Source of the DNA: Podarcis vaucheri
Taxonomy: Eukaryota
Reading direction: 5' to 3' (one strand)
Length of the DNA: 64,000 bases
Assembly: GCA_965113315.1 (NCBI GenBank)
Contig: OZ220375.1
Shown one piece after another: positions 3,314-45,830 of the stretch (the stretch's first letter is position 1; every line of letters starts with the position of its first letter). Made by a program: the position numbers and the translations under genes. Below the pieces are notes generated by a model, which saw only the letters and a program-made list of their open reading frames with translations, was not told where the DNA came from and did no database searches.

Positions 3314-3318
3314 TCAAC

Positions 3319-23128: not shown

Positions 23129-26100
23129 TCATTCTAGGCCAATCCACTTCTTCACCACGCTTAGGATATCTCCAGCTAAAAGCAGCACCTCCTTCTCCTT
23201 GCATCTAAGGAAAGCCTCATTGGGAATGGTGGGTGAATTGTGGTAGCTGGGATACTGCGTTCTCTTGTCATCCACGCCATGCTGCCGGAGTTCCTCAATC
23301 TGATCAGGCAGCTTTTCCAACTCCTGTCCATAAGAAGCTACCTTACTAGCCAGCATTGGAAGAGTCAGATTCCTGTCAAAGCGACCTCCCTGGTAGTATT
23401 CAACTGCTGTCAGGGCTTTCTCCACTGTCCGGTAAGTCTTGTAAAGCAGCCATTCAGTGCTACCCTGACCAGCACTACTGGCTGCCGCCTTCAGATCACA
23501 CTTGGCTTGCCTTAGCCAGCGCCTGGCCTCCTCCAAGCAGTGAAGTTTTGATTGATCCTTTGAATACTTTGGCCCTCTCTGATGGAAGGACCAGAAGTTG
23601 TAGTTGCAGTGGCCTCCTCCTCCACCCCCACCCCACCCTCCTCCACCCCCACCCCATCTTTGCCTGGTGAATTCTGTACGCCTCTCTTGATGATGATGAG
23701 CTTGCTGGTCCCATTCACCCCAAAATTCAGAGCTCCTCTTGTAGGAACCTCTACTTTTGGGTCCCCCTCTGGAGCCACTGGGTGTTCTATTGTTCTCCAT
23801 CTCCTGGATCTTGTCTTTAAGGTATTTGAAAATTTCATTGGCAGAATCCTCTTGACCTATGTTTTTATCTGGGTGGTAGCACAGATAGAGTCTTCTTAAA
23901 GCCTTCCTCCTCTCATCCTCTGACAAGCTCCAGATTTCAGCCAAGCAGGCATCCACTTCTTTCTTTATCTCACTCAGTGGCCTCTCGTACCAATTGCCGC
24001 TTGTAAGTGGTCTTGCAGTACTGCTAGCACCAGGGGAGCCTTCTGCCAAGACCACAGCTTTACTCAGATCAGATGCAGAGTTATTCCTCCGGAAATGGTA
24101 AAGGTCATAGGCACTGACCTCTGCATGCTGCCCTCCTCCCAAGTCAACAAGGTATGTGTGTACTTGGCCAGTACCGCTCTGCCGTGGCCCAAGGGCTTCA
24201 AGGACCACAGCGTAGAGGTAATGCTCTCTGGGCTTGGAAGAATCCAGGTAACCCACGTAATCTTCTGGCAGAAAGGTGTGGAGGATGCTCATGTCCAGGC
24301 TGTCATACCATTCCTCAGGGATGTCCTCTCCAGGAGGAGGCAGGATATAGGCATTTAGGTTTGCTGGCAGCTGCAAGGGCACTTTGTTTTTCTCTAGCAC
24401 CTCAGCAATTTCCTTAGGCCTTTGGCAAACCAAAATCTGCCCAAGGACCATCAGGGCATCCAGGTTAAATCTTTGTCCTAAAAGCCTATTCAGTTCTGTG
24501 GCTAAATTGCCAGAGAACTCCACAGCCCACTGTGCACCTTTGCTCTCCTGGTGTGCAAGGTAAAGCTGCAGTTTGCCATCTGGCATTGTTGCAGCATACA
24601 CTGTCTTGGCACACTGGGTTCCTTCCATGCTCTGCGAATTGTGCACCATGGTTGTGCACACTTTTTCACAACAAACCACTTCTAGCCGCTCCGGTGAGAA
24701 GTGTCCTTCAAACATGCATTCCACTTCCTCTACTTTTGTCCCACCCTGCCATTTAAGCAGTGCAACCAGAGCATGCTGGAACTCGCAAGACATGAGTAGT
24801 TCTTGTAGCCAGTTTTGGAACTCACAGTGTTCCCCATAGGTACAGAGTTTCAGAGAGGACTCTTCCAGCTGCTCTTCAGTGATATCTGACAAGTTCTTGG
24901 GGCGCAAGGCTTCAGGCAGCTGATGCAGAAGCCTCTGCTGCTTATACTTGTCGTAAGGTAGCTGACATATTGAGAGATCTATCAGAAAGCGAAATTTGCA
25001 CTGCAAGCCCTGGGGTTCCTGGCCAGACTTGTAAAAACTAAAGATGAGGCTGTTTGATGGATATAGCTTCCCATCAACACAAGGCAGATGCAGTTCTTTC
25101 AGCTCTGAGAAATCCATTTGATCCTTTGCTTCATCTAAGAGCTGGAAGAGCAACTGAGTGGCCCTGAGCACTGTTTTGGTGAGGTTGGCATGCAGTTTAG
25201 CCTGCCTTACAGTCTCTGCATGAATTCTGGCCAGAACACTGGCATAGTGATGGATGCTTGCCTCATCTTCCACTCCCAATTTCTCCAGGACATCCATATA
25301 GACAGCTAGCTTTGGTGGTAGCTTGTAAAGATACGGCCGGAAGTCCTTTGGGTATTTTAATGAGACCACCACATTCTGGGCCTCTGCTACCTCACTGTCA
25401 TCCACTAGTATCACAGGGAATCCCTTTAAGCAGGCAGTCTCTAACATTTGCTGTTGCGACAAATAGCCATAAGCTGACTTTAGGACATCCTCTCGAGTTT
25501 TCCTAGCTTTTGGAGTGTCACATGGTGCCTGGCATACGTTTCTTAGATTCTCCAAGACTAAATGGGCTGGCAAGGTGCGCAGCACTCCCAGTTGTTTTAG
25601 GATGGTTTCTTTATTTTCCCCAACATATTCAACAGAAGGCAGAATGACCGCTGAAGTCCACACCAGGTCTGCTTTCACAGTTAACAAGGAACCTTGGGGT
25701 GCCACAGGAGTATTACACGGCACGTATGGCAAGTGAAGGCAACACAGATCTTCAGAGATCTTCTTTGGCAATAGGAAACGGATCTTGGACACTGTTTCCA
25801 GGAAGGCCTCTGAGAAGTTTTCACTGGAAAGCAAGTAGCTCCAGAGTGCTCTCCTCCTTTTATCAAGATCATGGGCACCGTCCTTCTGTTCTCCAGCCCT
25901 CAATGCTTCTTTTGCAATTTGGGTAGCCAACACTATAAAGCATTCCTCGGAGATCTCTTGCTGCAAGCCCACATCAAGTAAGAACTCTTTCAACTCCCAT
26001 ATATTCTCTGGCCACACTGAGTCATAGAATTTGCGTGGCACAAACAGAGAATCCATTCTCAACTCCTTGAAACACATTTTCTCCTCATAAAAATAGGACA

Positions 26101-29100
26101 CAGGACGCATCACACCTTGCTTGTCCCGGATGAAGGCGAAAGACTGGAATGTTGTCACCACTGTCTTTTTCTCGGCCTGATATTCCTTAGGATAATGCCT
26201 CTTGATAAGGAGGAGTAATCTCACAGCCTCCAGTACACGAGCTTCGGGAAGATGGGACAGCCGAGGCAAAAGCTGCTGTACAAACTGCTGCAAATCGTTC
26301 ATTACACCAATGCTCAAGCTCTTACTGAGATGTCGGTTCAGCAAGCTATCGCTCAGCAGGACAGTCTTCTCATCTACCTCATAAAGCTCCTGGAAGTTCT
26401 TGGTTTCCTTTGGAATCTTGGACTCCAAGATGTAGATATTCCTGTATGAAGCCAACGAAACGTGCTTCCCTTGGTGTGTTTTAAACACAGGCAAGGATTT
26501 CAACTTGCTTAGCAATCGATGGTCATTCTTCAGCGTCTCCAGTTGGCTGCTTAGGAACCGCAACAGCGCTTGAAACTCCCACCCTTTGAGCGCATCCCAA
26601 CACAGGTCATGATGAGCTGCCAGTTGTTCCAGCACTACTGTAGGATTCTCGATCTGCAACACACATGGCAGAATGCAATGTGCAGCGAGCTTTGGAGGCA
26701 AAAGAGAGGAGTCCAACTTGGAAAAGCCCAGTTTGTGGAGAATTTCAGTAACAGGGCCTTCTTGACCAGGCATTATCGTGTTGAGGGACTCAAGAGGAAC
26801 CAAGAACTTAGTGCAGCCACAACACACAGGGAGCATGGCACAACCTTTGAAGAGGGAAACTAGCTCTGCAAACATCTTTTTCATCGTGTCTGAATTCGCA
26901 GTCATGCAGATCTGGTTCTCAAAGAAAGCCCACAATTCACTGAGCCATTTCTGGCCTTTATCAGTACTGACCCTGTTGTCCAAAGACAGCATCTCCTTGA
27001 TGAAGGCCACAGAATCATCGAGTGTAAAATCCTTTAGGAACCCCATATTTACTAATAGCTGCTTGGCCTTTCCATCAATTCGGCAGCGAAAGAAACAGTC
27101 CTGATGGTGTGGGAAAAGATGGTGCACACTGCTATGGTATGGAGGACACTGCTGAGTGAAGCACCTCAGCATGTTATCTTGGGTCACCAGCAAAGGGAGA
27201 CCTTCCAAGCAGCTTTTGTCATCAGGAAGAAGCTTACTGAGGCAGAACTCGAGGAGAGCAGAACAGTCGCAGCTATTCTTCACAGGTGTCAGATGAAGTG
27301 GGCAGGGCAGGAGAAAGTTGGGCAGGTTCTTGAGGAAGCAGCAGAGGGAAGGAGAATCGAGGGTTAGGATATCAACTCCTGCCTTGACAAAATGGTCGCG
27401 TACCAATTGCAAATGTTGGAAGGCAGGGACAAAATTCATGCCCAGACTCTGAAGAGTAAGCTCAAGAACCTCACTTATCTCAGATGGCAGGAAATAGGGA
27501 TCACTGGTTGGGTGGCCCAGTCTGGGTGCACTCCAGTGCACACTCACTTCTTCCATCTTAAATCCATACTTGAAATTAATCTCCTTCTGGTACACAGGGA
27601 CCAAGGGAAGTTGCTCCATGTATGCCAGTTCATACACACGGGTCACCAGCTGTTGCCATGCTGGGGGGACATCCCTTGTCACAAATGGGAAATACTGCAA
27701 ATAGTTTGATTCCAGCCACTTCTCACATGCAGTCAGGGAGTGGAACTGCAGTGGTGTATCATTCAGCGCCTGGCGCAGCTCATAAAGCAAGTGGCAGTAC
27801 AATGGGGCAATGAGACACTGCAGCAGCGAGTTATTCCAGGACATATTGGCACCACCTTCACCATCATCCTTCCGCAAGCCACGGCGAGCAGAGTCCACAG
27901 CAAAGTTCCCATTGATGTGGATGGGAAGTCCTGTTTCTTCCAGAAGCGGCAGTGTGCAGAAGGCCCTACCAGGTGGCCGTCCATCAAAACAAGCTGCCAC
28001 ACCCCCACACGCCAAGTCCATGTTTTGCACGGTATTGTCACTCTCAAGCCCAATCTGCCTACCTACCAGCCAGTTGCTGGAAACGTTGGAGATACTACTC
28101 TTCACCTTCATTCTGTAGAAGACTCTCATTGGCTCGCCATCATCCATTCCACCTGCTGCAGCAGCCTGTTGGAGACGCTTCTGGTATTCCAGTCTTTCAG
28201 GCTCACCACCTTCAGCCTCTACCCGCAGCACCTCCTTCGGTGTCCCTCCCCTCTCACTTATTATAGAGAAGACCACGCAGCGAACGTGGTTGAGGAACAT
28301 CACAAGGCTGTCGGCTTCTTCAATGAGAGCCACCACAATTTTCTTCATGTCTTGCTCGGACACAGAGCTCTGGCAGATACGGGATGAGGCTGCACCATCA
28401 GGAGTACGTAAGGGTAACCGGAAAACTGTGCCTTGTTCCAAGTTAAACACATCAGGTAAAAAGGTATTATAAACATCACGGATGGTGTCTTTGACTTCTT
28501 TAGCAAGGTTGTACATTCCACCAGGTGAGATCTCATCAGAATCAGGGAGGTAGTGCAACATGGGGTCAAAGACGCACAGAGCACTGTCCCCCGTCACAAA
28601 GGCAGGGCAGTCAGTCAAGTGATAAACTGTACTGAAACCTAGTCCATATTTGCCGGTAGCATCTCTCCTCTCACCTTTGCCACCAGAACCCAAGCGCTGG
28701 ATCCCTTCTATGTCACACCTTTGGAAGGTGCGGTCATTGTAGATGCAAAGTGCCGGGCCTTGAAGTTCATTCCACTCCTTGCTGAAGACGCGATCAGTCG
28801 GGTGCTGTCGCCGATCCCAGACAAAGTGGACAAGATTTGCACCCGCATCGTCTGCATTCTGCAGCAGCTCCTTTAGCACATCCTGTGAAGAGGAGTACTC
28901 ACGGAGGATGTTGGCCAGCCGGGTACAGATTTCTTCCTTGGCTCCAAAATCTGTGGCCCAGGAAGAGAGACCCTGAATCCGCTGGCGTGACAAGACACGT
29001 CCTTTTGTGGTCTGAATGCCACAGCGCATAGCAATTTCCCGCGGGATCATGGCATGACAGAGCAGGGTCCCTTTCTCATGCGGAAGCCATGGTGTGTCAT

Positions 29101-32100
29101 CAAAGAGGAGTTTGGGCAATGGACGAAGGACTTTGTGTTTGTCTGGGAAAAATACACTCTGGGCTTCATAAGGACTCAACTGTTGACCCTCTGGCAGGGC
29201 TTCGGCCAGCCCTACAGTGATCAACCTGACAACTAGGTCCAGATGCCCTTTGGAAAGAGACTGTCCAGCTCCCTCCTTGGCCAAAGTCTGCAACACAGTG
29301 GCATAGTCCTTCACTTTGAAAGTCGCAGGCAACCCAACACACTCCCACAGCATCTTTTGCTTCTGGTACTCCTGAGGCAGCTGGAAGAGGTATGGAGCAG
29401 CATCAAAGAACAGGCAATGGGCCACACTGCACACTGACACAAAGCCAGTGTCCATGAAAACAAAGGGGAATGTCCTTGCCCTTTGGGACACCTCCACCTT
29501 GGACAGAGGGTTCATCTGCACTATTTCATTCAGGAACGCATAGCAGATTTGTGCTATGTTTCCCAGCTCCGTTCTGGACAGGGCATTGGAACTACGTGAT
29601 GCTTCCTCCAGTTGTGTCAGCACTGTAGATACTGGCGGCTGGCGATTCAGTCCTAGGAATTCCTTTAGCTCCATGGAGAGCTTCAAGCCTTTACCAAGGG
29701 CTGTCTTGTCCAGGACAGGCTCAGTCAAGCCTACCAGGGGGTGCTGCTTATGGCAGTAAACCTCTTTGGGGCAGCAGAGTTTGCGTTGGTTAGCAGGTAG
29801 TACTGCTGGCAAGAAGGGAATGTCTCTGAAAGTAACCTGGGTAGTGTTGCTGTAGCTTTCCTGCAGGTGGTCCTCAAGGAGCTCTAGGATGCAGCGGGCA
29901 CGCTGGCAGGCCTTGACTGGGTCATGACTCCACAAGGCTGCCACAGTTCTGGCTCGGGCTATCAGTTCCTCCATTTCTACACAATCTTTGGCCATGCCAA
30001 GATGCTCCAAGCGCAACAGCCTCTCTGGTTCCAGAAACCCTGTGCCCGTGGGGAAACGGCCATCTTCAGGAGCGTAGAGAGGTGCAGCGCAGCCCCTTGG
30101 GTGTACAAGTTCTTTAATGTTTCTCAGCAAACTATTGGGGACAGTTGGAATGCAAGGCCAGGATGTCAGGATCTTATTCACGCCAGCATCATTCATATCC
30201 AGAGCACGAAGAATGAGGACATCGCGATCAGGCACTGCCAGCTGAGCAAGATTGGGCAAAACAAGCTCACAGAGGAATCGTGCCCAATTGTAGGTGTTTG
30301 GCAACAGGACGTCCCCCTGGATGCAATCTCTGAAGTTCATCTTCACCCAATCTGGAACTGACACCGCCATCTTTGGCTCTGGCAAAAGTAAAGAGAAGAC
30401 CCTCAAAGCTATAGGTTCCAGATGCTCCTGACAGGTAATGTCAGAATTGAGGATACAGGCATCCCGGGCTGGGCACCATCGCTGTCCATCAGAAAAGAGA
30501 ACTGGCTGTTCCCCATCAACACCATTGACTAAGGCTTGGTAGAAGGCCTTGACTGTTTCACTGAATGGGTGCTTGGCACTGCGCACGTCAGGCCAGAAAG
30601 CATGGTACTCATAGTCCTCCAGCAATCCTTCCTCGTACATGTCCCGGAGCAGGGACAGTGCTCCAAGCCAGGCACCCAGCACGGAATCCCGTAAGAGTGC
30701 CTTGTTCCATTTCCCCTTCTCAGTAGCTTCCCAGAGTCCTTTGCGATTACTCTGCACAGCAAAGACTGCCGTGAGATGCAACGGGAGTCCAGTTTCAATA
30801 GGAAGAGGTAGAAAGCAGAAGGCACGGCCCTTAAAACCATCTACACCTGGAACCCATTTTCCAGCAGCAGTGGCGGGGCGGAGGGCCAAAGCAACGCTAG
30901 CAACAGGAGGCGAGAAATGGACATCCTTTTCTTTTTCCTGTTTGAAGACCTGAAGGGCTTCTCCTTGAGCAGAGCAGGAGTGCAGCAGGTAATGGCTGGT
31001 GACCACACTCGACTTCCATGTTGCTGTCAACTGCACAATAGTGGACGTACCCATCCTGACAAGTGCTTTCCTGCTCACTGTGGCTAATGGCTGGGTGGTT
31101 TCTGGGGAACTGGAACCATGAGGAAGGTGGGTCAGTGACACCTCCTGCACTTTTCTCAGGAAGATCAGCAGGTACTTGTACATCTCCCGGAAACCAATTT
31201 GCAAGGATTTGATTCGACTGGGTCCAAACGGATCACAGCAGATCTGAGAGTCCTCTGCCTCCTCCTCAGTGCGGAAGGGCAGGCGGAGGAGCGTGCCTTG
31301 GTAATCATCTCCAGGTTGACAGCCAAAGATTCCTCTGAACGGTCGAAATTGTTCAGGAAATCCAGCAGCGACTTTTCGGTTCAATGTGAGACGCATGCCT
31401 GGTTGGCCTGAATTACGGATATGCTTCCGAAGGTGGGTGATGTTTGGGTCAAAGATGAGCATGGTGTGGCCACTGAGAAGAGAGGGCACATCAGTGATGT
31501 GGTAGACAGTGCAGAAGCCCAGCCCAAAGCGACCAATCTTGTCATCCTGCCGTTCCTTGGTAGCTGCACCTAGACGGATGATGTTGGAGAAATCTGTCTC
31601 GGTGAAGAACGCATCATTCTGGGCCCAAAGTGCGGGGCCCTGGCAGGCAGCCATGCCCGGGTCCAGGAGTCCTTCAGTGGTACCGTTATGCTCACGGAGA
31701 TCGACTAGGAAGCGGCAAGTTTGGGCGCCAGCATCCTCAGCATTTTGCAGCAGTTCCAGGAACACATCTGCATCCTGGCTGTATTCACGAAGGATGTTAC
31801 GGATCCGGAGGGTGATTGGCTCCGAAGGACCCCACGCCTGAGCCTCCAACACTTCCAAGCCTGAAAACCGTGTGCTTAGCATTTCCACACCATGGAAGGT
31901 AGCAGTGGCAGAGGAAACAGATTCATGCACCAAAGTAGGTGGGTCGCCATCCAGCTCAGCAAGGTGCGCCCGATCCATATCACAGTACAGCACAGAACTG
32001 GCCGGGCGTAGAACAAAACCGGACAGTCCTTGAATCCGCACAGGCACTGGCATTTCCCTTTCTCCATGGTAGCCACGAGCGCACAGCCAGTCTAGGACAG

Positions 32101-33930
32101 CTATCACGAGGAGCAGTTCAGCATGCATGCCGCCTTGTGGTCGGGCATTGATTTGATCTGCCAACTTCTGCATTGCTTGGCACACTTCCTCCTCTTGTGG
32201 TAACTTATGGACCCCCCATGCTGCAAACAGCTGGCTGTAACCTTGGAAGTCCAGAGGCACTCGTGGCATCAGGGCTGTAAGGTCTAAGCCATCAGGGTAG
32301 GCCAGCACCACATCTGCAGCCAAGGAGAAGCCAGTCCCATTCCACACCACAGGTCCCACAGGTGGCTTCTGGAAGTCCCGCAGGTGCTGTTGCATGTGCC
32401 GATAGATGCTGTGCAGCTTTGTAGTTAACACAAAAGCCTCCTCAGGGTGACATCCCTGTGCCAAGGCAGCTAGATTCTCCATCACGTTCTCTGGTGGAGG
32501 AGAGTTCTCCAGACCCAGTTCTTTTGCAGCTTCTGGCCGAAAAGCATTAGTCAGTCCCATGACCAGCCCGACAAGAGCAGCGTACTTCTCCGAGCGAAGC
32601 AATTCAGGTGCCAAGAAATCTCCAGCTGCCGCCAATGTGGAAGTGTTGGTGGCAGGCACCCAAGGCAGGGACCGCAGCCGCTTCAGCTCCTTTAAGGAGA
32701 AGTGTGAGAGTAGAGGAGTCTCATTGCAGACCCGGATGAGTGCCTGTGATTTGGCACTGGCATCTGCAGCCTCTTGCAGTTGACCAACTTCCTCTGCAGC
32801 CATCAATGCATCTGCTGGACAGACAGCACTGAGATCAGATTTCAGGCCCAGAACACGAAGGGTTCGCAGTGCTGCTGGCTCCCGGAAGGGCCCTGTGGGG
32901 AAGCGGCAAGGTCTCAATAAATCCTGCAAAGTGCGATTCTCTGGATCATAGAGGTCACTGGGCCTGCCCAACCTTCCTGATCCGCAATCCAGGAATGGCA
33001 GCTCACGACACAAAGTTTGCAGCTCTCGGCTCTGGCTGAAGAGGGAGTCCCCATTGTGCAGCACCCACAGCATGAGCCGCTTGGCTTCCTGTGCCCAACT
33101 GGCATATGCCCCCTTCGTCATCGCCTTGATGCACAGCAGGCACAGATCCGGTGTCCCCAGCAGCTTCTGCCCGATTAGCAAGAGCAGGTGGCGTTCAGCT
33201 TCATTCTGACACAACAGCACAGGCTCTGGAGTTAGCAGATCCGAGGGCACTGGTGGAACCAGGTTCTTCTCTAAAGCCAGGTGGTGCTGGGCTGGCACCA
33301 AGCCAGACCTGGTGGGTGGAAGGAGGGAGGGCATCTTGAAGAAGAGTGGCAACTCAGTTAGGACTTCGGCTTCTTTGGGGGAAAGCGACGCAGCCGTGGA
33401 GAAAAAAGCACTCAGGCTCTTGATCTGGCAGGTGGGCAGAGATGCAACGCGACCAGCCACAGATGCCACCCCTAAATGGGCAAAGACCTGCAAGACACTC
33501 CCAGGCGTGGGTTCTAGGATGTACTCTCTCAGCTGGTGGTGGCACCATTCTGGCTGCCAGCTCCGGACCATAGTGCATCCCAGTCTCTCCAGAATGCCAG
33601 CCACTTCGTCCGGCAGACAACGCCCCTCATGGCTCTGGAACAGCAGAGTAGGCTGAGGCAGCAGCCGTGCCAATTGGATTCCACTGTGGGAGTTCTGTAG
33701 AGGAGTCAGTGGTATCAGGGGGCATCCCTTGAAGGGTGCCAGGGAGGGAGCATGGCGACTCAGGAAACTCCAGAAAGCAGAAAGCCACTCAAGCGGGGGC
33801 TGTTTTGGGTACTCCTTTGGGCACCAAGCTACAGGAGCAGGGTTGCTGCTGACCCAGTCCTTAGGGAGAGATCCACGAAGGTTCTGCTCAATGACATTTT
33901 GATCCATGGAAACAAAGTTCCTGAATAACC
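23129..33930 (-). CDS. Sacsin-like protein, giant last coding exon (10,802 bp): SRR2, SRR3, J domain, HEPN
   Basis: Open frame with [46 protein letters not shown] and EARRWLRQAKCDL; acceptor (ct)n-catattcag at 33931, phase 1 matches the upstream exon. Confidence 0.95.
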
Positions 33931-34926
33931 CTGAATATGAGAGAGAGAGAGAGGGAGAGAGAGAGAAATCAGCAACCACCATTTGTGTGCACTTGCATTT
34001 CCTGTTGGGAGCAAAGTGGCTATGTATACACGACTTCTATGCCCAGCACTGAAAACTACTTTGGATGCAACCGAACTCCAATATGTATAGGTCTGTGAAT
34101 GATTTGGTATCGCAATGATGCTAGAGCACTGCTGAAGCAAAGTGAGCCTGAAACTGATCAGCGTACCAAAAACCAGCGTGGTATAGTGATTACAGCAGGC
34201 AGATGCAAACTGTGGCCCATCAGATATTGCTAAACTACAACTCCCATCATCCCAGGCCATTGGCCATGATTAAGGGAACTGGTGAAAGTTGTAGTTTGTC
34301 AACATCGAGAGGGCCAAATGTTGCCTGCCCCTGGATTAGAAAATAAGACTAAGGCAAAGGAGGACAACCTTCAGCCCTTGCTCTAATTTCATGCAGGTGG
34401 TGGAGGACGACCCAACAGAGAATGATGGAAGGGTGGTGGAATCCACTGCAAGCGATCAGATCAGACCTTTGACAAGAGTGATCCATCTCTACTGGTGGCT
34501 GGGGGGAAATGTTCCCCAACCCTGTGCTTAAGGGTTCAAATGCCCAAACTAGCTGTTAAGTTAGTTTACTTGGAGACAGCCACTCTACTGCTATTTGGTG
34601 TCACGCTCACTATCTTTCCACCTAATCTATTTTACAGTGTTGCTGGGAGGAGAAAATGGCGCCTGTGTGTAAAAAGCATGTGTTTGTACATGGTAGAACA
34701 TTTACACTGGTGGCAGCCAGCCTGGTGCCCTGTGGATGCTGTGGATTACCATCCCCATAATCTCTGACCGTTGGGCCATGCTGGCTGAGGCTGAAGGAAG
34801 TTGAAGTCAAGCATGGCCAGTGAAAATAGGAGTTGCAGTCTAACAGCATCTTAAGAACATCAGGGTGGGGAACCCATAAAACACCAGAAGCTGATCATGG
34901 TGCACCCAGGAAACTGAAAGTCTCAC

Positions 34927-35015
34927 CCTTTTCTGCAATTGTTTGCAGATGCTTCAGCAGCTCAGGGTTTAGATCCTTGGGCAAGAACTGGTGAGCCAGG
35001 CCAGGCAACAGGATC
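34927..35015 (-). CDS. Sacsin-like coding exon 6 (89 bp)
   Basis: ttttgcag|...|gtgag; encodes (R)ILLPGLAHQFLPKDLNPELLKHLQTIAEK(G); phases 2->1 fit neighbours. Confidence 0.85.
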
Positions 35016-35510: not shown

Positions 35511-36945
35511 CTGGGGAAGTTGTGGTTCTCGAGGAAGACTGTCTCTCCAGAATCTCCAAAGCAGGTAAAGTTTCCATTGGCTGTCGGCAGCAGCGGCAGA
35601 TTCTTCAGCTCCTGGTAACACCCATCTCCAACCAAGTACTCCAACAGCAACTGTTTCTCTGTCAAGGATATCCCATGCCACACACTGGTAGTCCGTCGCA
35701 GGGTCTCCCTGACAAACTTTGGTGTGGCCTCTTGCACCACTGCCCTGCCTTTGGCACCCCACACCAAAGCTCGGCGCACATGGAGAGGAGGAGCAGCAAG
35801 TGGTGATCCTGTCAAAATGAGGGCCTTCTCCAGGGCCTTCTCTACTGGTTTACCACTCACTACCTCTGGCAAGATCACGGCTTTGCAGGGGTGGAGCAAA
35901 CGAGGTTCCCCATCCCCGACTCGTACCAAGAGTTTCATGTCCATCAGTGTCTGGCATATCTGAACCACTAAAGGCTTGTATCGGAGTTGTTGGCTTTGGT
36001 CTGGGTCTGGCCACGCCCCATATGGGTTGTCCGGACAGGTAGATGCCAGCAGTACCATTTGGCAATAAGCAACAGGCAACATCTCCTCCATAAGCAAGTG
36101 GTTCCAACGACCATCGGCTCCCCTCGCTTGGGACCCCTCTTCAGACCACTGCACGTGTCTTCTGTCATCTGTCAGCTGGAAAGGGGCACTGATGTGCAGT
36201 GGCAATCCAGTGGTGTTTTCCTCTGTGGCCGGGAGCGGCAGGACGCAGCTGAGGCGTCCCATGCACTTGTCTTGCAAACAGTAAGCCAAGGACAACACAG
36301 GCTTAGAGCTGACCTTCACTGCGAGTTCCCACAGTTCTGGGAAGGCATCCTTTTTCGCTTCAGCAGACAACACAAGCCAGTTGCACTTGCTGGCCTGTCC
36401 AGTCCCAGTGCCACATAGAGTAAGTGTTTTGATGTGGACACCCATGTCCAGTTTAGTGCCCATAGCATCATCAACAAGGTTTGCCTTTCCACTACTGCAT
36501 TCTGCAACTTCCAGCACACCTTGGCTCATGCCCAACCCATTAAATGGGCAAGTGGTGGCCTCGGCCTTCAGCAGCTCACGGATGGCACCATCGGACTCAA
36601 TGAGACCCAACGTCAGTTTCTTGATGTTCCTGAGGAACAGCAAACTAATGGGGGCATCATTCACGAACGAGAGCAGCAGTTTCTGCACCCGTTCTGGAGT
36701 GTAGAGATTTTCTGAGATCTTCGATGGACTCTGTCGTAGCGGGAAGCGAAACAGGGTGCCTGGAAAGCGGCCCTCCGCAGTTGGGCAAGGCTGGCCCAGA
36801 GACCTCAGTGCTGCCCAGAATGGTTGGAACTGGTCGGATGCCTCTTCCCATTCACTCACCTCCCAGAGCTGACCCCCGTCATGTAATGCCATCTGCTGTG
36901 GGTCCAGCACCCCCAAACATTCATCAGAAAGTATAGATGGGAAAT
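35511..36945 (-). CDS. Sacsin-like coding exon 5 (1435 bp), rest of SRR1
   Basis: ctgtttag|...|gtgagc; (D)FPSILSDECLGVLDP...FPGTLFRFPLR...TGLPLHISAPFQLTDDRR. Confidence 0.92.
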
Positions 36946-37362: not shown

Positions 37363-37509
37363 CTGTGATATGGTAAACTGAATTGAAGCCCAAGCCAAAG
37401 CGTCCAACTGTAGAAGGGTCATCCTCCTTGTGACTGATGCCTGGACTCTGGATCCCTTCCCAGTCAGCCTCAGAGAATAGACCATTGTTATAGGCAAGAA
37501 GCGCAGGGC
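37363..37509 (-). CDS. Sacsin-like coding exon 4 (147 bp)
   Basis: tttttcag|...|gtgaga; (G)[48 protein letters not shown]; the ORF track shows a different frame here. Confidence 0.92.
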
Positions 37510-38459: not shown

Positions 38460-38571
38460 CTTGGGTGCTTGCCAGCCCCTCTGAGAAAAGGCTCTGGGTT
38501 CCAAAACTCCGTGCATCATAGAGCAAGATCACCTCTTCAGCCCCCGCATCATCTGCATTTTGGATCAGCTC
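38460..38571 (-). CDS. Sacsin-like coding exon 3 (112 bp)
   Basis: cttcctgaag|...|gtatgg; [37 protein letters not shown] (GHKL N-box). Confidence 0.92.
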
Positions 38572-39114: not shown

Positions 39115-39202
39115 TTTTAAGATCTGACCCCCATCTGGGTACTTGCGGAGGATACCCTGCAAGTATTTGAGGACAGGAGGTGATTTTTGTCGAAAGCCCT
39201 TC
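39115..39202 (-). CDS. Sacsin-like coding exon 2 (88 bp)
   Basis: ctttctttcag|...|gtaagt; KGFRQKSPPVLKYLQGILRKYPDGGQILK resembles the start of sacsin SRR1. Confidence 0.9.
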
Positions 39203-40572
39203 CTGAAAGAAAGGCAGACGGTTACAGTAGTTAGAGTCTATGAATAGAAACAGAGAGACTTCAGTCTAAACAGGACCAGGATGTGGGGTGGGGTGGTGCA
39301 CCCGGGGAACCTTGACCTCACTGCCGACCTGCCCAACCCTTGCACTGCCCAAGTAAACTGTAGCAATGGTGTAGCTACAGTAACCGGGGTGGAGGAAGGG
39401 GGGCCGGTGGGGGCGGTCCACCCCGGGTGTCATCACTGAGGGGGTTGATGTTCGGCACACTGCCCGCCCACGACTCCCAAGCATATCCCAAGCCATCAGG
39501 GGAAGGGGCAGAGCTGCGCCGCCTTCCCCCTTCGTTTTGACAGCTCGAAGGAGGCTTGGGAGTTGCGGGTGAGCAGCTCGCCATTGCCCCCCCGCCTCCT
39601 TTGGGGGGGAGCCTCTCCTGAGCTGTCAAAAGGAAGAGGGAAGGGAGGAGGGATGCTGGCAAAGCGGCGTGGCTTCCTCCCTGCCCCCACCCTGCCCAGG
39701 AAGCAACCTGCCATGGGTGGCTTGCTTCGCCCCCCAGGTGTCTCGCCCCCTGGGACACTCGCCCTGCCCCCTGGGTGCACAACATGTGCGCAGCTCCTCC
39801 TGCCGCAGCAGCTAGCTCCACCTCTGTGAGAGCCACATTCCCAGTCGTGTGTGTAGCCACCAAATGCACAATAATGCTAGTATACACAGGTGTACATGCA
39901 TATACAGAGAGAGACAGAGAGATGTATTAACATGCACAGCAACTGGGGTTGAAAAAAGCCTTCTAACTTTTAGCAAGCCTAATTGCCAGGAGAGAGAAAG
40001 AGAGAGATTCCTGGAAATCTCAGCTGAGAAGAGAGATGGGTTAACCCTTCCCTCTCCAACTGCACTCTTCCCAAAGATCATCCCTCTCATACAACCATTA
40101 CAGCAAAAGAAGACTTCTTAGAAAATACATTGTGGAGGATTTACAAGTGGGGAGAGAAAAGGATTAATCACGCTTCTGGACCCAGCTGCAAACCCACCAC
40201 CCTAAAAACAACACAACCCAATTGAGCTTGGGGAAAAGCTTACTATTGGCTACAATAGAAGGCCTTTGCAATCTTAAGTTTAGCAGGGGTGAGAAACACT
40301 ATAAACAGAATAGGGAGGCAACTGGCCCATGGTCCAAAGGTTCCTAACTCCTAGTTTAAATCCTCCCTCTGCTGTTGGGTCTGTGTGCAGGTTTCCCTCC
40401 TGAGTGACACTGCTTTGTTGTGGCATCTGCCTGGACAATTTAGTATTCAAAGGATCCTGGGCTGCCACTACTGACCCAGCTTAGCTACTGGATCCTACTG
40501 GCCAGCAAAAACTGTAAGTGAACTTCTTGTTCCAGGTAAGCCTTGTTCAAGGCTTGTCTCCCTGACATCTTG

Positions 40573-40574
<2 letters not shown>

Positions 40575-40610
<36 letters not shown>

Positions 40611-40616
40611 TACTAC

Positions 40617-40655
<39 letters not shown>
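40575..40655. repeat. (TAT)n/(TAC)n microsatellite
   Basis: Trinucleotide run directly abutting a MITE. Confidence 0.95.
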
Positions 40656-40656
<1 letters not shown>

Positions 40657-40898
40657 CAGTGGTACCTCGGGTTAAGTACTTAATTCGTTCCGGAGGTCCA
40701 TTCTTAACCTGAAACTGTTCTTAACCTGAAGCACCACTTTAGCTAATGGGGCCTCCTGCTGGTGCTGCGCTGCCAGAGCACAATTTCTGTTCTCATCCTG
40801 AAGCAAAGTTCTTAACCTGAGGTACTATTTCTGGGTTAGCGGAGTCTGTAACCTGAAGTGTATGTAACCTGAAGCATATGTAACCCGAGGTACCACTG
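40657..40898. mobile_element. Tigger-like MITE (taacctga family)
   Basis: TIRs cagtggtacctcgggtta / taacccgaggtaccactg, TA TSD. Confidence 0.88.
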
Positions 40899-41147
40899 TA
40901 CCCTATACCCAGAGGTCTGTAGCCTTTTGTTCCTAACTTGCTTCTTCATCCTGCCTCATTTAACTTTTGGTTCTCATGACAAGCTCTCACCACAGCCTCC
41001 TGCCCACAGCCTAACCCTCAGAGCCACAGAGCTCACTGGGTGACCTTGGGCCAGTTCTTCACACACTCGGTCTAGCTCTGAGCTCCTTGGAGGAAGAGTC
41101 AGCAATGTTTTAAGCAAGGTGTTATCAGATCCCAGATAGTTTTGGTT

Positions 41148-41357
41148 CTAACTAAACATCAGAAAGAACTCTCTGGTGGTAAGAGCTGTTTGACATTGGA
41201 ACAGTCTCCCTCGGGAGATGGTGGACTCTCCTTCCTTGGAGGTTTTTAATCAGAGTTGGATGGCCACCTGTCATGGATGCCTTAGCCGAGATCCCTGCAT
41301 AGCAGGGGGTTGGATTAGACAACCCTTTAGGTCCCTTTCAACTCTACAGTTCTATGA
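41148..41357 (+). mobile_element. CR1 LINE 3' fragment
   Basis: W..LPREMVDSPSLEVF ORF2 tail and ggtccctttcaactctacagttctatga end. Confidence 0.8.
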
Positions 41358-41437
41358 TCAGCACATCCAGCACAGTCTCACTAGCATTTTTTTGTCCATG
41401 AGAAATCCCATGGATACACACACACTGCATTTCTCAC

Positions 41438-41460
41438 CTCTTCTTCTGCCCCTGAGACAT
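41438..41460 (-). CDS. Sacsin-like coding exon 1 (exon 41468-41438; ATG at 41460; MSQGQKK)
   Basis: cttttgcag|GTATCAAC ATG TCT CAG GGG CAG AAG AAG AG|gtgaga; phase 2 joins exon 39202 in frame. Confidence 0.7.
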
Positions 41461-41802
41461 GTTGATACCTGCAAAAGTGAGGAGAAAAATGCAGAATGAG
41501 GAAAAAATTGAGTCTATAATCTCACCAATACAATTTGCACATTGGTCCCCACTGAACAAAAAGAGCTCATAAACTATTGTTCCTTCTGTAAATGGACATT
41601 TTTTAACAAAACAGACAAGAGGAATCACTTACCATGATGTTACAAACACACACCCCCACTCATCTCTCATCAAAGGGATTTTGGAACAATAGAAAACCCT
41701 GCCAGGCTGCAGTTTCAGATAGGTAGCCGTGTTGGTCTGCCATAGTCAAAATAAAAAAAATCCTTCCAGTAGCACCTTAAAGACCAACTAAGTTAGTTCT
41801 TG

Positions 41803-41840
41803 GTATGAGCTTTCGTGTGCATGCACACTTCTTCAGATAC
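41803..41840 (-). ncRNA. Minimal type I hammerhead ribozyme motif (Penelope pLTR)
   Basis: GTAT-CTGAAGA-A-GTGTG/CATG/CACAC-GAAA-GC-TC-ATAC on the minus strand. Confidence 0.75.
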
Positions 41841-42234
41841 ACTGAAACAGAAGTTGCCAGATCCTTCTATATAGTGAGAAGGTGGGGAGGGGTATTACTC
41901 AGAAGGGTGGTGGGAATGGGTGATTGGCAGATAGCTGAGATGAGCCTGTTGACGACTCTTAACGACTGTAATAGGTCTTACAGGAAAAGGCAAGGGGTGA
42001 GAAGGTGAAAAATGGCTTAGTCATGTATAATGAGATAAGAATCCAATGTCTTTGTTCAGACCAAGTCTCTCCATGGTTTTAAGTTTGGTAATGAGTTGCA
42101 ATTCTCCCAGGACATTCTATACAAGATCTCAAAGTAGCTGTTTTACTACAAAGGAATTTCAGAAATAGACTGGAAAGAGAAGCTGCTGAATTGCTTCTCA
42201 CTATATAGAAGGATCTGGCAACTTCTGTTTCAGT

Positions 42235-42272
42235 GTATCTGAAGAAGTGTGCATGCACACGAAAGCTCATAC
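42235..42272 (+). ncRNA. Minimal type I hammerhead ribozyme motif (Penelope pLTR)
   Basis: GTAT-CTGAAGA-A-GTGTG/CATG/CACAC-GAAA-GC-TC-ATAC. Confidence 0.75.
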
Positions 42273-43149
42273 CAAGAACTAACTTAGTTGGTCTTTAAGG
42301 TGCTACTGGAAGGATTTTTTTTATTTAGGCTGCAGTTTGTTATGTGTGCTGGAAACTGTAGCTTATGTGAGGAAGAAACTACAGTTCCCAGGATTCTTTG
42401 GAGAAAACCAAGTGCTTTAAATGTATGGTAAGGATGTGACTTCTGTTACCAAAGGCAAAAGCAAACAGTCCAAGCCTGCCACAAGCAGTGTGGCATCTTT
42501 CTCTGTCATCTGCTTCCGATCTAAAACACGTTTACTAAATTATTATTACTGTAACTTATAAAATTTGTAGGTCGCTCTGTACTTGCAGGTCTCAGGGCAG
42601 TTCACAGGATAAAATCACAATATAAAAACACAAAGTACATAATCAAATCAAAAACCAGTAACCCCTCACAACACAATTTAAAATTAAGTCCTTTTAAGCC
42701 ATTGGGACCAACTCACTTTAGAGTAAGCTTACTTAAGACTGACTATGATCTGGAATGTGCTTTTGTTTTTAACAGACTGTGCAACAATTCCATGAGGTGG
42801 ACAGGAAAGGTTGCCGATATTTATTTAAACCACTATTTTGCCAGATATACATTTAAGCCACTATTATACCATTTTAACAGTCGTGGCTTCCCCCAAAGAT
42901 TCCTGGAAACTGTAGTTGGTTAAGGGTGCTGAGGGTTGTTAGGGAACCTCTAATTCCCCTCACAGGAAGACAATTGCCAGAGTTCTCTGGGAAGAGGGAT
43001 TTATTGTTAAATCACTCTTGAGATCTGTAGCTCTGTGAAGGGAACAGGGGTCTCCTAACAACTCTCAGCACCTTATCAAGTTCCTTGAACTCTTGCCAAC
43101 TCCCAGTTCTTGTCCTGTGTCAGTTCATCTTTTATTCATTTTCTTATGC

Positions 43150-44080
43150 AGGCATACAACCTTTTTACTATTTATTATAGTTATTGTTTATTAAATTAAA
43201 ACCTTTGACACCAAAAGCATTCCAAAGATTACAAAATAAAATGAACCTACAAATAAACTAGACAGTGTATACAAAGAATCAAGCTTGTACTGTTCTTTTC
43301 CTGAGAGTATGTTGCCTTTGAACAAATAAAAGTTACATAATCCAGATATTTCTAAAGACCAGTGGCATAGGTTTCACACCACATTTCTTGTGTACATAAT
43401 AAAAGGCCACCAAAAATGTCTCTCTTTTTTACCCTAGGTCAAACGTACCCTTATCAATACGTCAATTAACATGATTTCCCATGCTCTGTTGTACTATTTT
43501 GCTGTGTTTCAACACTTGTAAGTCCCCCCCCCCCTCCAAATCTCGTCACTGAGATTCTTGGAGCCCCACCAAGAACTTGTTTATGTAAGCTTTTCTGATT
43601 TCCCCCTGTAATAACAGATCCAGTTCAGGTGCTTTGGGGATCCCTTCCCTGCCCCCCCCCCGACAATTACTGCTGAGGTTTCATTAAAAATCTTTCCCCA
43701 AAATTTGGCAACATACTTACAATCCCACCACATATAAGATCCAACTCCCCAACATCCCCTCCAACAAAACTTTTTAATTTATTTTTTAATTGTTACAACC
43801 TAAAAGGTGTTAAAAATCACTTCTGCATATTTTAAAGTGATGTTTCCCTAAATTATACTGAAGTATTATTGTATGGGAACTTTCCTCCCAAGGCTTTCCA
43901 CTGTTCACCTCCTAATATTCCTGTCTTTTCTCATGTTTCTCAGTCCAGCTGCATTTTGCTTAACCTAGTAGCGTGGACCCTACTAATAATTTATCAAACA
44001 TCCCTGCATCATTTCAAACTACAGACCCAACTGTAACACTTGTTCAGCTCCCCTAATTTTAAGGGGAGCACTTTGGAAGA
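43150..44080 (-). mobile_element. Degraded L1-clade LINE 3' end
   Basis: Minus-strand CWRGCWGVGSYMWWDCKYVAKFWG (~43695-43766) resembles the L1 ORF2 C-terminal Cys-rich motif; boundaries approximate. Confidence 0.65.
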
Positions 44081-44846
44081 ATGGATCACAAACACGTAAG
44101 GGGGAGAGACACATCCCCTGGTCATCACAGGCCACTGAGGTTATTTGGTTCACTCCTTTTCAGCCATCAAGACAGCCAAGCAAACAATAAACAACACATT
44201 TACAGGGCCAGAACACAATGGAAGCACATGATCCGTTACAACTATTGCAGAATCATCATTTCCGGAGAGATTTTTGTGTTTCCTACCAAGGGTTGATAAG
44301 AGAGGATGTGCTCTGACTGAAACCTTTTTTCAGCCCAAAGTCCACATTCTGGGCATCACATGCCTGTGGTGGGCATGGCAAGAAGCAAAAAGTGGACAGA
44401 GAAATGGGTGTGCCTCTTACCCTCATCAAGAAGGAAACATCCCAGCAAACTCAACGCTAGAGGTTTCTAGATGGACACAAACTTATATATCTATGCAAAC
44501 AAAAGGCATTATCAAAAATGTTCAAGGACACCTTCCAAGCCAGCCAAAAACAATGGAGGAGGATGCAGAGCCCAGATGGTGTCTGGGGTGAGCATCAAGA
44601 AAGCAAAGGGGAGGGGTTTACATTTGTAGATTCTCAACTACAGTTTTATAGGAATTGCTTGGGTACCAGAACAGTGGGGCTGCTCACTTGCCACCTCACA
44701 TTCTTCAGCCTTTCTTTTAATTGCTATATGCAGGGAAACAAAATTCATTCAAGTGACAAGGCCTTCCCTGATTATCACTGCATCCAGACAGTAGGGAAAG
44801 TTTCGCCTTTTGAATGCCTGCCAGCCAGGCCAACTAGACGCAGGAG

Positions 44847-44959
44847 TCAAAATTAAAAAATTCCTTCCAGTAGCACCTTAAAGACCAACTAAGTTAGTTC
44901 TTGGTATGAGCTTTCGTGTGCATGCACACTTCTTCAGGAGAACACGGCTACCTATCTGT
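44847..44959. mobile_element. Short Penelope-like insertion with partial hammerhead core
   Basis: Same pLTR sequence; TSD aactagacg(g)caggag; minus-strand CTGAAGA...GAAAGCTC core at 44904-44937 lacks the 5' stem-I strand. Confidence 0.8.
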
Positions 44960-45591
44960 AACTAGACGGCAGGAGGTTCCCCAGAATGCAAAACAGTGGT
45001 AATTTCACGCAGTACCATTTAGAATACAGCCATATTTGTATTTCTACTGCATAGTCACACTATAAACCAAGTCTACACAAGGAGAATGAGGTCTAAGAGC
45101 CCAGCACTGCACCATTTTAGTCGACAAGGCTAAACGTCAAGGCAAGTCGACGTTTTAACTTTCCCTCCCAAGTTTTATAAAAAGAAAAGGCAAGTTCCCT
45201 GCAAGTAGAAATTAGAGCGTTAGGAACACGGCCGAGCTATATATTTTTATCCCCCGCCTGAAGTATTAGCTTTTTGCTTCTGCGGGGAATTTGCTAGGTG
45301 AGGAAAACCTCAAAAGCGATGGCTCACAGACGCCAATCTCTCAGCCTAGCCTACTTCCCAGGGCTGCTGGGAGGATAAAATGCGAACGAGGCACCTTGCG
45401 CTCTTTGGAGGAAAGGTGGGCTAGAAGTGTCTGTATTAACTAAGCAAATATGTTTAGGATCAGAGCATTTCGCTGTGTTTCCAGAGACGCTCGTACTTCT
45501 TCTAAGCCTGTTTAAACCCCGTTACTCCTCCCAAGGAGCCCAGGAGTCCTGTTGAATCGGTCCCCATCACCTGCGGTCTGTTATTACTCAC

Positions 45592-45830
45592 CGCGTCTCT
45601 TGGAAGATGCAGGTGCGCAGCTTCCCGGCCGACGATGACTAAAGAGCAAAATAGGTCCGCCGCCCTACCTCGCCTCAAGGCGGAGGGCGAGGGAAGCAGC
45701 GGCTGCTGCGCTTTAAAGATGCCAGTCGCTTTCGATACCGGCGAAATGGAAACCGAAAGCGATTTCGCTCCGTTTGGGAAAGAGGCGGGGAATGTCTCGG
45801 AGCTGAGGAGTGGGGCGGGCACTTTTAGAG
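45592..45830 (-). promoter_or_regulatory. Sacsin-like gene CpG-island promoter / non-coding exon 1 with ISRE-like element
   Basis: CpG-rich; minus-strand donor GTGAGT at 45591-45586; GAAATGGAAACCGAAAGC at 45743-45760; GC box at ~45812. Confidence 0.65.

What the first reader, a model, noticed from the sequence alone, without database searches (positions are those of the whole stretch)
23129..45830. Intact ~4231-aa sacsin paralogue with an ISRE-like promoter: candidate interferon-induced ATPase/J/HEPN effector
Seen: seven GT-AG coding exons (23+88+112+147+1435+89+10802 = 12696 nt) splice into one open frame. It has three GHKL repeats retaining ELxQNAxDA and GxxGxGF, an HPD J domain and a C-terminal HEPN, and its upstream CpG island holds tandem GAAA repeats. 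Established: this architecture defines the sacsin family, and HEPN and GHKL domains recur in defence systems. From memory, not verified: sacsin-like transcripts are reported as virus-responsive in fish. Inference: this is not the SACS orthologue but a separate, possibly innate-immune sacsin gene retained in squamates.
Basis: partly seen in the sequence, partly recalled or inferred. Interest (0 to 1): 0.9.

Follow-up and report, generated by a model that had tools for sequence, protein, structure and literature searches.

The report
Lizard sacsin-like gene with ISRE
This is an intact lizard copy of an old, fast-evolving sister gene of the ataxia gene SACS, already labelled "sacsin-like" in related lizards and not found in mammals; its start region carries a textbook interferon-response element, so it is a plausible but untested antiviral-response gene.

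Summary
Seven minus-strand coding exons (23+88+112+147+1435+89+10802 nt) have open frames and AG/GT borders. They match, exon for exon, the RefSeq "sacsin-like" protein of Podarcis muralis (4231 aa, 96% identical over the giant exon). The protein has three Hsp90-like ATPase repeats with every listed ATP-contact residue kept, an HPD J domain and a C-terminal HEPN. It has no ubiquitin-like domain.

Two trees place it in a "sacsin-like" clade separate from true SACS, each clade with 100% support. That clade is not squamate-specific. It holds sharks, ray-finned fish, lungfish, amphibians, turtles, birds and squamates; no mammal was found. It evolves several times faster than SACS.

A perfect GAAANNGAAANNGAAA element at 45743-45758 is the only one in 64 kb (0 of 100 shuffles). 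It sits in a small CpG-rich patch just upstream of a 5'-UTR exon. Fish "sacsin/sacsin-like" transcripts are documented as virus- or poly(I:C)-induced.

Induction in lizards was not tested. The HEPN lacks the canonical Arg of the Rx4H dyad, so the "RNase effector" reading is weak. The scan's earlier notes on this gene all lie on this same window.

The parts
45743..45758 (+). Triple-GAAA ISRE/IRF-type element, GAAATGGAAACCGAAA. It reads antisense to the gene; ISREs act in either orientation (established knowledge).
   Evidence: It is the only match to GAAANNGAAANNGAAA in 64 kb, and 0 of 100 shuffles had any match. The 60-bp span around it has the highest GAAA/TTTC density in the window, equalled at only one other site.
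45550..45850 (.). Small CpG-rich patch that holds the ISRE, a TTTAAA (45712-45717) and two GGGCGG/CCGCCC boxes. This is the likely core promoter.
   Evidence: GC 0.58 and CpG observed/expected 1.09, against 0.3-0.7 in the flanks. Motif scan and a check that the segment is not repeated elsewhere in the window.
45592..45640 (-). Non-coding 5' exon with donor GCG|GTGAGT after 45592. Its 5' end is uncertain: either a transcription start near 45690, or the acceptor at 45640 as used in the P. lilfordi model.
   Evidence: Read from the sequence. The P. lilfordi model P0398 joins this exon to the ATG exon.
46423..46488 (-). Possible alternative upstream 5' exon, used in the P. lilfordi gene model. The window has ACG where that model has its ATG, so it is not coding here.
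   Evidence: tblastn of the P0398 N-terminus against the window; sequence read.
41438..41468 (-). Exon with the start codon (ATG at 41460; 23 coding nt, MSQGQKK).
39115..39202 (-). Coding exon 2 (88 nt), the lead-in to ATPase repeat 1.
38460..38571 (-). Coding exon 3 (112 nt), with the repeat-1 N-box ELIQNADDA at 38545-38571.
37363..37509 (-). Coding exon 4 (147 nt), with the repeat-1 G-box GRFGLGF at 37385-37405.
35511..36945 (-). Coding exon 5 (1435 nt), the rest of repeat 1.
   Evidence: Pfam SACS domain PF25794, E 7e-15.
34927..35015 (-). Coding exon 6 (89 nt).
23129..33930 (-). Giant last exon (10802 nt; 3599 full codons plus the stop).
   Evidence: ORF list; Pfam SACS E 1e-160, HEPN, DnaJ; PDB sacsin chains.
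31514..31756 (-). ATP-binding core of repeat 2 (ELLQNAEDA ... GRFGLGF).
   Evidence: PDB 5v44, E 1e-35.
28634..28870 (-). ATP-binding core of repeat 3 (ELLQNADDA ... GKYGLGF).
23774..23971 (-). J domain, with HPD at 23867-23875.
   Evidence: PDB 1iur, E 1e-12; Pfam DnaJ weak, below its cut-off; alignment; coordinates.
23132..23527 (-). HEPN domain, with RTQYPSYH at 23240-23263.
   Evidence: PF05168, E 3e-10; PDB 3o10, E 5e-21, and 1ufb, E 1e-4, with alignments.

Best explanation
This is the lacertid orthologue of the vertebrate 'sacsin-like' gene, an ancient paralogue of SACS. It encodes a 4231-aa protein with three Hsp90-type (GHKL) ATPase repeats, a J domain with HPD and a C-terminal HEPN, and it has no N-terminal ubiquitin-like domain. 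Shown here: the gene is intact; it belongs to a clade separate from SACS that runs from sharks to squamates, with no mammal found; it diverges several times faster than SACS while keeping every listed ATP-contact residue and the HPD. Inferred: transcription starts in or near the small CpG-rich patch at about 45.6-45.8 kb. The perfect triple-GAAA ISRE there would make the gene inducible by IRF/ISGF3 after interferon or virus sensing, as reported for fish sacsin and sacsin-like transcripts. Further inferred: the protein works as an ATP-driven remodeller that recruits Hsp70, and its HEPN serves for dimerisation or nucleotide/RNA binding rather than as a canonical RNase. My odds are about 0.97 for identity and paralogy, about 0.55 for interferon/virus induction in lizards, and about 0.35 for the chaperone-type mechanism.
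For: The exon model is open and matches RefSeq orthologues exon for exon. Domains: PF25794 E 1e-160, PF05168 E 3e-10, and PDB sacsin ATPase repeat, J and HEPN chains. Trees: SL 100% and SACS 100% SH-aLRT under LG+G4 on 3373 columns and under LG+C20 PMSF on 844 columns. Species with both genes are listed. Rates: turtle-bird 49% identity against 91% for SACS, lizard-snake 66% against 90%, lizard-shark 37% against 71%. The ATP-binding residues of Perna et al. (PMC9880540, Table 1) are kept in all three repeats across the clade; HPD is kept. The ISRE is unique in the window with 0 of 100 shuffles matching; no HSE, GAS or NF-kB site lies nearby; the patch is CpG-rich. The donor at 45592 is also used by an independent P. 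lilfordi model. Fish literature: cod 'SACS' up 12.5-fold after poly(I:C) (PMC3534563); lumpfish sacs-like up while sacs goes down (PMC11357929); trout sacsin-like induced by IPNV in all responding leukocyte types (PMC11258392); a recurrent virus-responsive gene in NNV studies (PMC8875540).
Against: There is no expression or induction data for any reptile. Two RNA-seq runs of a closely related species gave zero depth on the 5' exon and the ATG exon, so even the transcription start is unconfirmed. An upstream exon at 46.4 kb in one annotation would put the ISRE in intron 1. Conservation of the ISRE in orthologous promoters could not be checked. I could not show that the fish virus-responsive transcripts belong to this same clade. 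The HEPN lacks the canonical Arg, and the putative catalytic Arg of repeat 2 is Lys here and varies across the clade.
Confidence: 0.6

Rival explanations
1. The gene is a constitutive or tissue-specific chaperone paralogue. On this view the GAAA element is incidental, or serves basal IRF1/IRF2-type expression, and the fast divergence reflects relaxed constraint rather than conflict with pathogens.
For: No induction data exist for tetrapods, and two RNA-seq runs showed no reads on the 5' exons. Divergence is spread along the whole protein rather than in sharp hypervariable patches. Birds have lost the HPD of the J domain, which looks like decay of part of the machine.
Against: A perfect triple GAAANN repeat is the only one in 64 kb and sits at the CpG-rich 5' end. 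Fish relatives are among the most recurrent virus-responsive genes (PMC8875540, PMC11258392). All ATP-site residues are kept over several hundred million years, which argues against simple relaxation.
Confidence: 0.3
2. The protein is an infection-triggered HEPN RNase effector, in the manner of RNase L: ATP- or Hsp70-controlled dimerisation of the C-terminal HEPN would cleave RNA.
For: The HEPN fold is present. The motif's His is kept in every sacsin-like protein sampled from shark to lizard, whereas SACS has Leu there. Lacertids carry a literal R-x6-H string, RTQYPSYH. HEPN RNases are common in defence systems (PMC3710099).
Against: Against the bacterial HEPN TT1696 (TRYPDAH), the canonical Arg position is Gln in the whole clade. 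The lacertid Arg lies two residues upstream and is Thr, Lys or Ala in the other sacsin-like proteins sampled. No RNase activity has been reported for any sacsin HEPN in the papers I read.
Confidence: 0.1
3. It is the one-to-one SACS orthologue of this lizard.
For: It has the same overall architecture: three ATPase repeats, a J domain, a HEPN and a giant last exon.
Against: It is 30% identical to Pogona and human SACS, while SACS itself is 71-91% identical across jawed vertebrates. It has no UBL. It sits in a separate clade with 100% support. Pogona has both genes.
Confidence: 0.01
4. It is an unexpressed or decaying gene copy.
For: RNA reads gave zero depth on the 5' exons in two runs.
Against: The frame of 4231 codons is open across seven exons with intact splice sites. 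Catalytic-site residues are conserved. Orthologues of the same length occur in many species.
Confidence: 0.02

Closest known systems
SACS (sacsin, the ARSACS disease protein; PDB 5v44/5v47 ATPase repeat, 1iur J domain, 3o10 HEPN)
   Same: Three Hsp90-like ATPase repeats with the same ATP-contact residues, a J domain with HPD, a C-terminal HEPN, and a giant last exon.
   Different: Only about 30% identical and in a separate clade. It has no ubiquitin-like domain, and the region aligned to the human XPC-binding segment is shortened and poorly conserved. It evolves several times faster. In the HEPN motif it has Q...H where SACS has R...L. It carries an ISRE at its 5' end.
Fish virus-responsive 'sacsin/sacsin-like' transcripts (cod, lumpfish, trout, sea bass, grouper)
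   Same: They share the family name and, for the teleost proteins of about 4250-4280 aa, the same clade and architecture as this gene. The regulation expected from the ISRE matches their induction by poly(I:C) and virus (PMC3534563, PMC11357929, PMC11258392, PMC8875540).
   Different: I could not map the published probes or accessions to the clade. No tetrapod data exist. This copy is from a terrestrial reptile.
'Type XI-A' SACSIN homologues of the Tiamat preprint (10.64898/2026.09.30.754977)
   Same: Three ATPase domains plus a J domain and a HEPN, without UBL and XPCB. This is exactly the architecture found here.
   Different: The preprint describes them as homologues from 'aquatic chordates'. 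Here the clade is shown to extend to turtles, birds and squamates.
Tiamat / NO VEIN (GHL ATPase plus PD-(D/E)xK nuclease defence proteins)
   Same: SACS-type GHKL ATPase (PF25794) followed by a solenoid repeat, with a nucleic-acid-related C-terminal domain.
   Different: Those proteins have a single repeat ending in a nuclease. This one has three repeats ending in J plus HEPN, and no NOV_C nuclease was detected.
HEPN RNases of innate immunity (RNase L KEN domain; bacterial HEPN toxins such as TT1696)
   Same: The HEPN fold, and the motif's His is kept.
   Different: The canonical Arg is replaced by Gln. There is no kinase or 2-5A sensor module.

Membership tests
Sacsin family (ATPase repeat supradomains + J + HEPN) | Three Hsp90-like SACS ATPase repeats with the ELxQNAxDA and GxxGxGF motifs | tested here: met
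   PF25794, E 1e-160 with two stretches in the giant exon, plus E 7e-15 in exon 5. Motifs in all three repeats. ATP-contact residues kept.
Sacsin family (ATPase repeat supradomains + J + HEPN) | J domain with HPD | tested here: met
   PDB 1iur, E 1e-12. HPD at 23867-23875. The Pfam DnaJ hit is below its cut-off (21.0 against 27.8 bits).
Sacsin family (ATPase repeat supradomains + J + HEPN) | C-terminal HEPN domain | tested here: met
   PF05168, E 3e-10; PDB 3o10, E 5e-21.
SACS orthologue group (ARSACS gene) | Falls inside the SACS clade | tested here: not met
   It lies in a separate clade; both clades have 100% SH-aLRT support under two models.
SACS orthologue group (ARSACS gene) | N-terminal ubiquitin-like domain | tested here: not met
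   Only 37 residues precede ELIQNADDA. SL proteins carry no PF00240, while many SACS proteins do.
Vertebrate 'sacsin-like' paralogue clade | Groups with the annotated sacsin-like proteins, with the clade's internal branching following the species tree | tested here: met
   It nests with P. muralis, then Lacerta and Zootoca, then Rhineura, then the other squamates. Identity is 96% to P. muralis.
Vertebrate 'sacsin-like' paralogue clade | Same exon structure and length as the annotated orthologues | tested here: met
   Exon borders coincide with residue breaks in XP_028607501.2; both are 4231 aa.
Interferon-stimulated genes | ISRE (GAAANNGAAA-type) at the promoter | tested here: met
   GAAATGGAAACCGAAA at 45743-45758, with 0 of 100 shuffles matching. 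The position relative to the true transcription start is not confirmed.
Interferon-stimulated genes | Transcript rises after interferon, dsRNA or virus | not testable with these tools
   No treated-lizard RNA runs were on offer. The untreated runs laid gave no depth on the 5' exons.
Interferon-stimulated genes | ISRE conserved in orthologous promoters | not tested
Catalytic HEPN RNases | Rx4-6H dyad at the canonical position | tested here: inconclusive
   A literal RTQYPSYH (R-x6-H) string is present. By alignment to TT1696 (TRYPDAH), however, the canonical Arg is Gln in the whole clade, and the lacertid Arg is not conserved.
Tiamat / NOV defence ATPases | C-terminal PD-(D/E)xK (NOV_C) nuclease | tested here: not met
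   There is no such Pfam hit; the C-terminus is J plus HEPN.

The most novel reading that the evidence does not exclude
The sacsin-like gene is a conserved interferon-induced antiviral effector of non-mammalian jawed vertebrates, from sharks to lizards and birds, that mammals have lost. On this reading it is a giant triple-ATPase, J and HEPN machine, distantly related to the bacterial Tiamat defence ATPase, that still acts in antiviral defence.
Probability: 0.3. Interest if true: 0.7.

Novelty: new member of a known kind. Interest (0 to 1): 0.4.

Why it matters
Sacsin is studied almost only as the human ataxia protein. Fish immunologists, meanwhile, keep finding "sacsin" among the top virus-induced transcripts without knowing which gene it is.

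This work shows a distinct, ancient sacsin-like paralogue that runs from sharks to squamates, was not found in mammals, and carries an ISRE in a lizard. That offers a simple way to reconcile the two literatures: SACS would be the housekeeping neuronal chaperone and the sacsin-like gene the immune-regulated one.

It also gives a tetrapod entry point for testing whether sacsin-type ATPases related to Tiamat and NOV still have a defence role in vertebrates. The gene itself is already annotated, and its regulation and function remain untested, so the value here is a well-defined hypothesis rather than a discovery.

Tried and rejected
- **RNA reads (read laying).** The first try failed with a machine error. 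The second try (the only one allowed) covered 41300-45900 with two raw RNA-seq runs and two contig sets of a related species (organism A). The contig sets hold about 50-60% of the sampled words of the giant exon. Only intronic SINE-like repeats were covered; the 5' exon and the ATG exon had zero depth. This gives no evidence on transcription, the start site or splicing.
- **Sequencing runs.** No holder of the giant exon is on record as RNA. The small contig sets labelled 'RNA?' are only a guess.
- **Orthologous promoters.** Orthologous promoters and coding DNA were therefore unavailable, and neither ISRE conservation nor dN/dS could be computed.
- **Other promoter elements.** A search for heat-shock elements, GAS and NF-kB sites in 45500-46000 found none. 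A heat-shock-type promoter was considered and dropped.
- **Bird and tetrapod induction data.** The chicken ISG paper PMC12172940 has no supplementary files held. The searches gave nothing useful; one search was badly designed because it did not require 'sacsin'.
- **Tree rows left out.** The amphioxus sacsin-like protein (P0121, 6360 aa, extra repeats) was left out of the trees to protect the alignment. The 'careful' bootstrap search did not finish in time, so the supports are SH-aLRT values from quick searches.
- **Joined model.** The seven exons were never joined into one sequence.
- **Complex prediction.** Not used. HEPN dimerisation is only an inference from 3o10 homology and is not central to the report.
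Full report
**Observation.** The window holds a minus-strand ORF of 3617 codons at 23129-33982.
- 41460-41438 (23 nt)
- 39202-39115 (88 nt)
- 38571-38460 (112 nt)
- 37509-37363 (147 nt)
- 36945-35511 (1435 nt)
- 35015-34927 (89 nt)
- 33930-23129 (10802 nt, including the stop)

All internal borders are AG/GT and every exon is open in its phase. The split codons are sense codons. The sum is 4231 codons plus a stop, and there is no N in the region. I did not build or search a joined sequence; each exon was handled by reference. Exon by exon, the translations map without a gap to residues 1-7, 9-37, 38-74, 76-123, 125-601, 603-631 and 633-4231 of the RefSeq protein "sacsin-like" of Podarcis muralis (XP_028607501.2, 4231 aa). 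The missing single residues are the split codons. The giant exon is 95.9% identical to P. muralis and 93% to Lacerta agilis and Zootoca vivipara. The window therefore comes from another lacertid close to Podarcis.

**Domains.** Pfam finds the SACS ATPase domain (PF25794) twice in the giant exon (E 1e-160) and once in exon 5 (E 7e-15), and HEPN (E 3e-10). DnaJ scores below its cut-off. PDB chains of human sacsin match the ATPase repeat (E 1e-35), the J domain (E 1e-12) and the HEPN (E 5e-21). All three repeats keep ELxQNAxDA and GxxGxGF, and the J domain keeps HPD. Only 37 residues precede the first ATPase motif, so there is no ubiquitin-like domain. None of the "sacsin-like" proteins listed carries PF00240, whereas many true SACS proteins do. 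The segment aligned to the human XPC-binding region is shortened and weakly conserved.

**Which gene it is.** The protein is about 30% identical to Pogona and human SACS. A whole-database search returns full-length "sacsin-like" proteins at falling identity:
- squamates 62-93%
- turtles about 52%
- birds 42-44%
- amphibians 37-42%
- sharks and rays 36-37%
- teleosts 33-36%

No mammal or crocodilian appears among the best 120 hits. A reciprocal search with hagfish SACS returns the UBL-bearing SACS of about 4580 aa from lamprey to human. Pogona, Pristiophorus, Pelodytes, Pleurodeles, Geotrypetes, Lampris, gar and lungfish each have one protein of each kind.

A maximum-likelihood tree of 51 rows on 3373 columns (LG+G4, echinoderm outgroup; amphioxus left out) gives two clades, each with 100% SH-aLRT support. 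One is SACS, which includes both cyclostomes. The other is sacsin-like, whose internal order follows the species tree, and the window sits beside P. muralis. A second tree with the site-heterogeneous LG+C20 model on 35 rows and 844 columns gives the same split. With that root, the duplication predates the jawed-vertebrate radiation and probably the split from cyclostomes.

So "not the SACS orthologue" is right, and "retained in squamates" is too narrow. The flanking ORFs look like FIZ1 and ZNF524 (leads only). From memory, those two genes are direct neighbours in human, which would fit loss of the gene in mammals.

**Rate and constraint.** The sacsin-like clade diverges much faster than SACS:
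- turtle-bird: 49% identity against 91% for SACS
- lizard-snake: 66% against 90%
- lizard-shark: 37% against 71%

Conservation peaks over the ATPase cores and is lowest in the last third of repeat 3. Every residue that Perna et al. (PMC9880540, Table 1) list as invariant for ATP binding or hydrolysis is kept in all three repeats in most of the clade members I examined, and in the window for repeats 2 and 3. The few exceptions are scattered single substitutions: Ser, Val or Ala for the Thr, Met for the Leu in repeat 2, and Ser for the Ala in one newt. For repeat 1 of the window, only the N-box and G-box residues were read in its own exons; the rest rests on the P. muralis orthologue. The proposed catalytic Arg is kept in repeats 1 and 3. 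In repeat 2 it is Lys here and variable elsewhere. This pattern suggests a working ATPase under selection inside a fast-changing scaffold. Without orthologous DNA I could not compute dN/dS.

**HEPN.** Alignment to the bacterial HEPN TT1696, which has the canonical dyad (TRYPDAH), shows three states:
- Human SACS keeps the Arg but has Leu for the His (TRYPDLL).
- The whole sacsin-like clade has Gln for the Arg but keeps the His (TQYPxYH).
- The R-x6-H string noted earlier in this window (RTQYPSYH, 23240-23263) uses an Arg two residues upstream. In the proteins aligned it occurs only in the window and P. muralis; the other sacsin-like proteins sampled have Thr, Lys or Ala there.

A canonical RNase site is therefore doubtful. 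The conserved His still marks a real difference from SACS.

**5' end and the interferon element.** The ATG exon has an acceptor eight bases before the ATG, so at least one 5'-UTR exon must lie upstream. A strong donor (GCG|GTGAGT) follows 45592, inside a 300-bp CpG-rich patch (GC 0.58, CpG observed/expected 1.09). The independent P. lilfordi gene model joins exactly this donor to the ATG exon. That model also adds a further upstream exon at 46488-46423, which cannot be coding here because the window has ACG where the model has its ATG.

GAAATGGAAACCGAAA lies at 45743-45758, 103 bp upstream of the 45640 acceptor and 26 bp upstream of a TTTAAA. It is the only match to GAAANNGAAANNGAAA in 64 kb, and none of 100 shuffles had any match. 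The local GAAA/TTTC density is the highest in the window. No heat-shock, GAS or NF-kB element is nearby, and the segment is not a repeat. From memory, its GGAAACCGAAA core equals that of the ISG15 ISRE.

Whether the element works is untested. 

**Literature.**
- A cod "SACS" probe rises 12.5-fold after poly(I:C) (PMC3534563).
- In lumpfish, sacs-like is induced while its paralogue sacs is repressed (PMC11357929).
- Trout sacsin-like is induced by IPNV in all responding leukocyte types (PMC11258392).
- Sacsin is listed among the recurrent virus-responsive genes in NNV studies (PMC8875540).
- A 2026 preprint describes "aquatic chordate" SACSIN homologues with three ATPase domains, J and HEPN but no UBL or XPCB, and relates the sacsin ATPase to the bacterial defence protein Tiamat.
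- Anantharaman et al. noted that the human sacsin HEPN lacks the catalytic motif (PMC3710099).

I found no paper on a tetrapod sacsin-like gene.

**Verdict.** The gene is an ordinary, already annotated member of a known family, but it belongs to a little-studied ancient paralogue clade not found in mammals. The interferon reading is a reasonable hypothesis, resting on a statistically striking ISRE and on the fish data, and it is not a result. The RNase-effector reading is weak.

Noticed in passing
window 2863-3265 (-): A solitary replication-dependent histone H4 gene (ORF 2954-3265, canonical 103-aa H4) with its 3' stem-loop at 2863-2908 (Rfam RF00032, 39.4 bits; GGCCCTTTTCAGGGCC ACCCA).
   Followed up: partly
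window 13344-14879 (-) and 56379-57503 (+): C2H2 zinc-finger ORFs flank the gene. Their nearest Atlas clusters are FIZ1 (188 shared features) and ZNF524 (174). An earlier scan note says the same. From memory, the two genes are adjacent in human, which would fit loss of the sacsin-like gene from this interval in mammals.
   Followed up: partly
window 46839-47555 (-): A 238-aa ORF about 1 kb upstream of the promoter looks, by eye, like the C-terminal part of a LINE reverse transcriptase (ADDTTL...). It has no Pfam hit at E<0.01.
   Followed up: partly
window 41608-42377, 42840-43147 and 44842-44995: SINE-like repeats in the first intron attract very deep RNA-seq and contig coverage, with many mismatches, strand-switch joints and loose ends. 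They are copies of a highly transcribed repeat family, not evidence for this gene.
   Followed up: no
window 40560-40690: A long (AAT)n/(AGT)n microsatellite in the intron between the ATG exon and coding exon 2.
   Followed up: no
proteins P0039, P0069, P0054 (bird sacsin-like): Bird orthologues are shorter (about 3700-3980 aa) and sit on a long stem branch (0.61). In the one bird shown in the J-domain alignment (Gymnogyps, P0039) the region is largely deleted and reads YNP instead of HPD. This suggests loss of Hsp70 recruitment in at least that bird.
   Followed up: partly
window 46423-46488 (-) versus P0398: The P. lilfordi annotation extends the protein by 49 residues through two upstream exons. 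In this window the corresponding start codon is ACG, so the extension is probably 5'UTR or an annotation artefact.
   Followed up: partly
protein P0124 (lungfish sacsin-like): The lungfish sacsin-like model has no residues aligned to the J and HEPN region. This may be a truncated model or a real loss.
   Followed up: no
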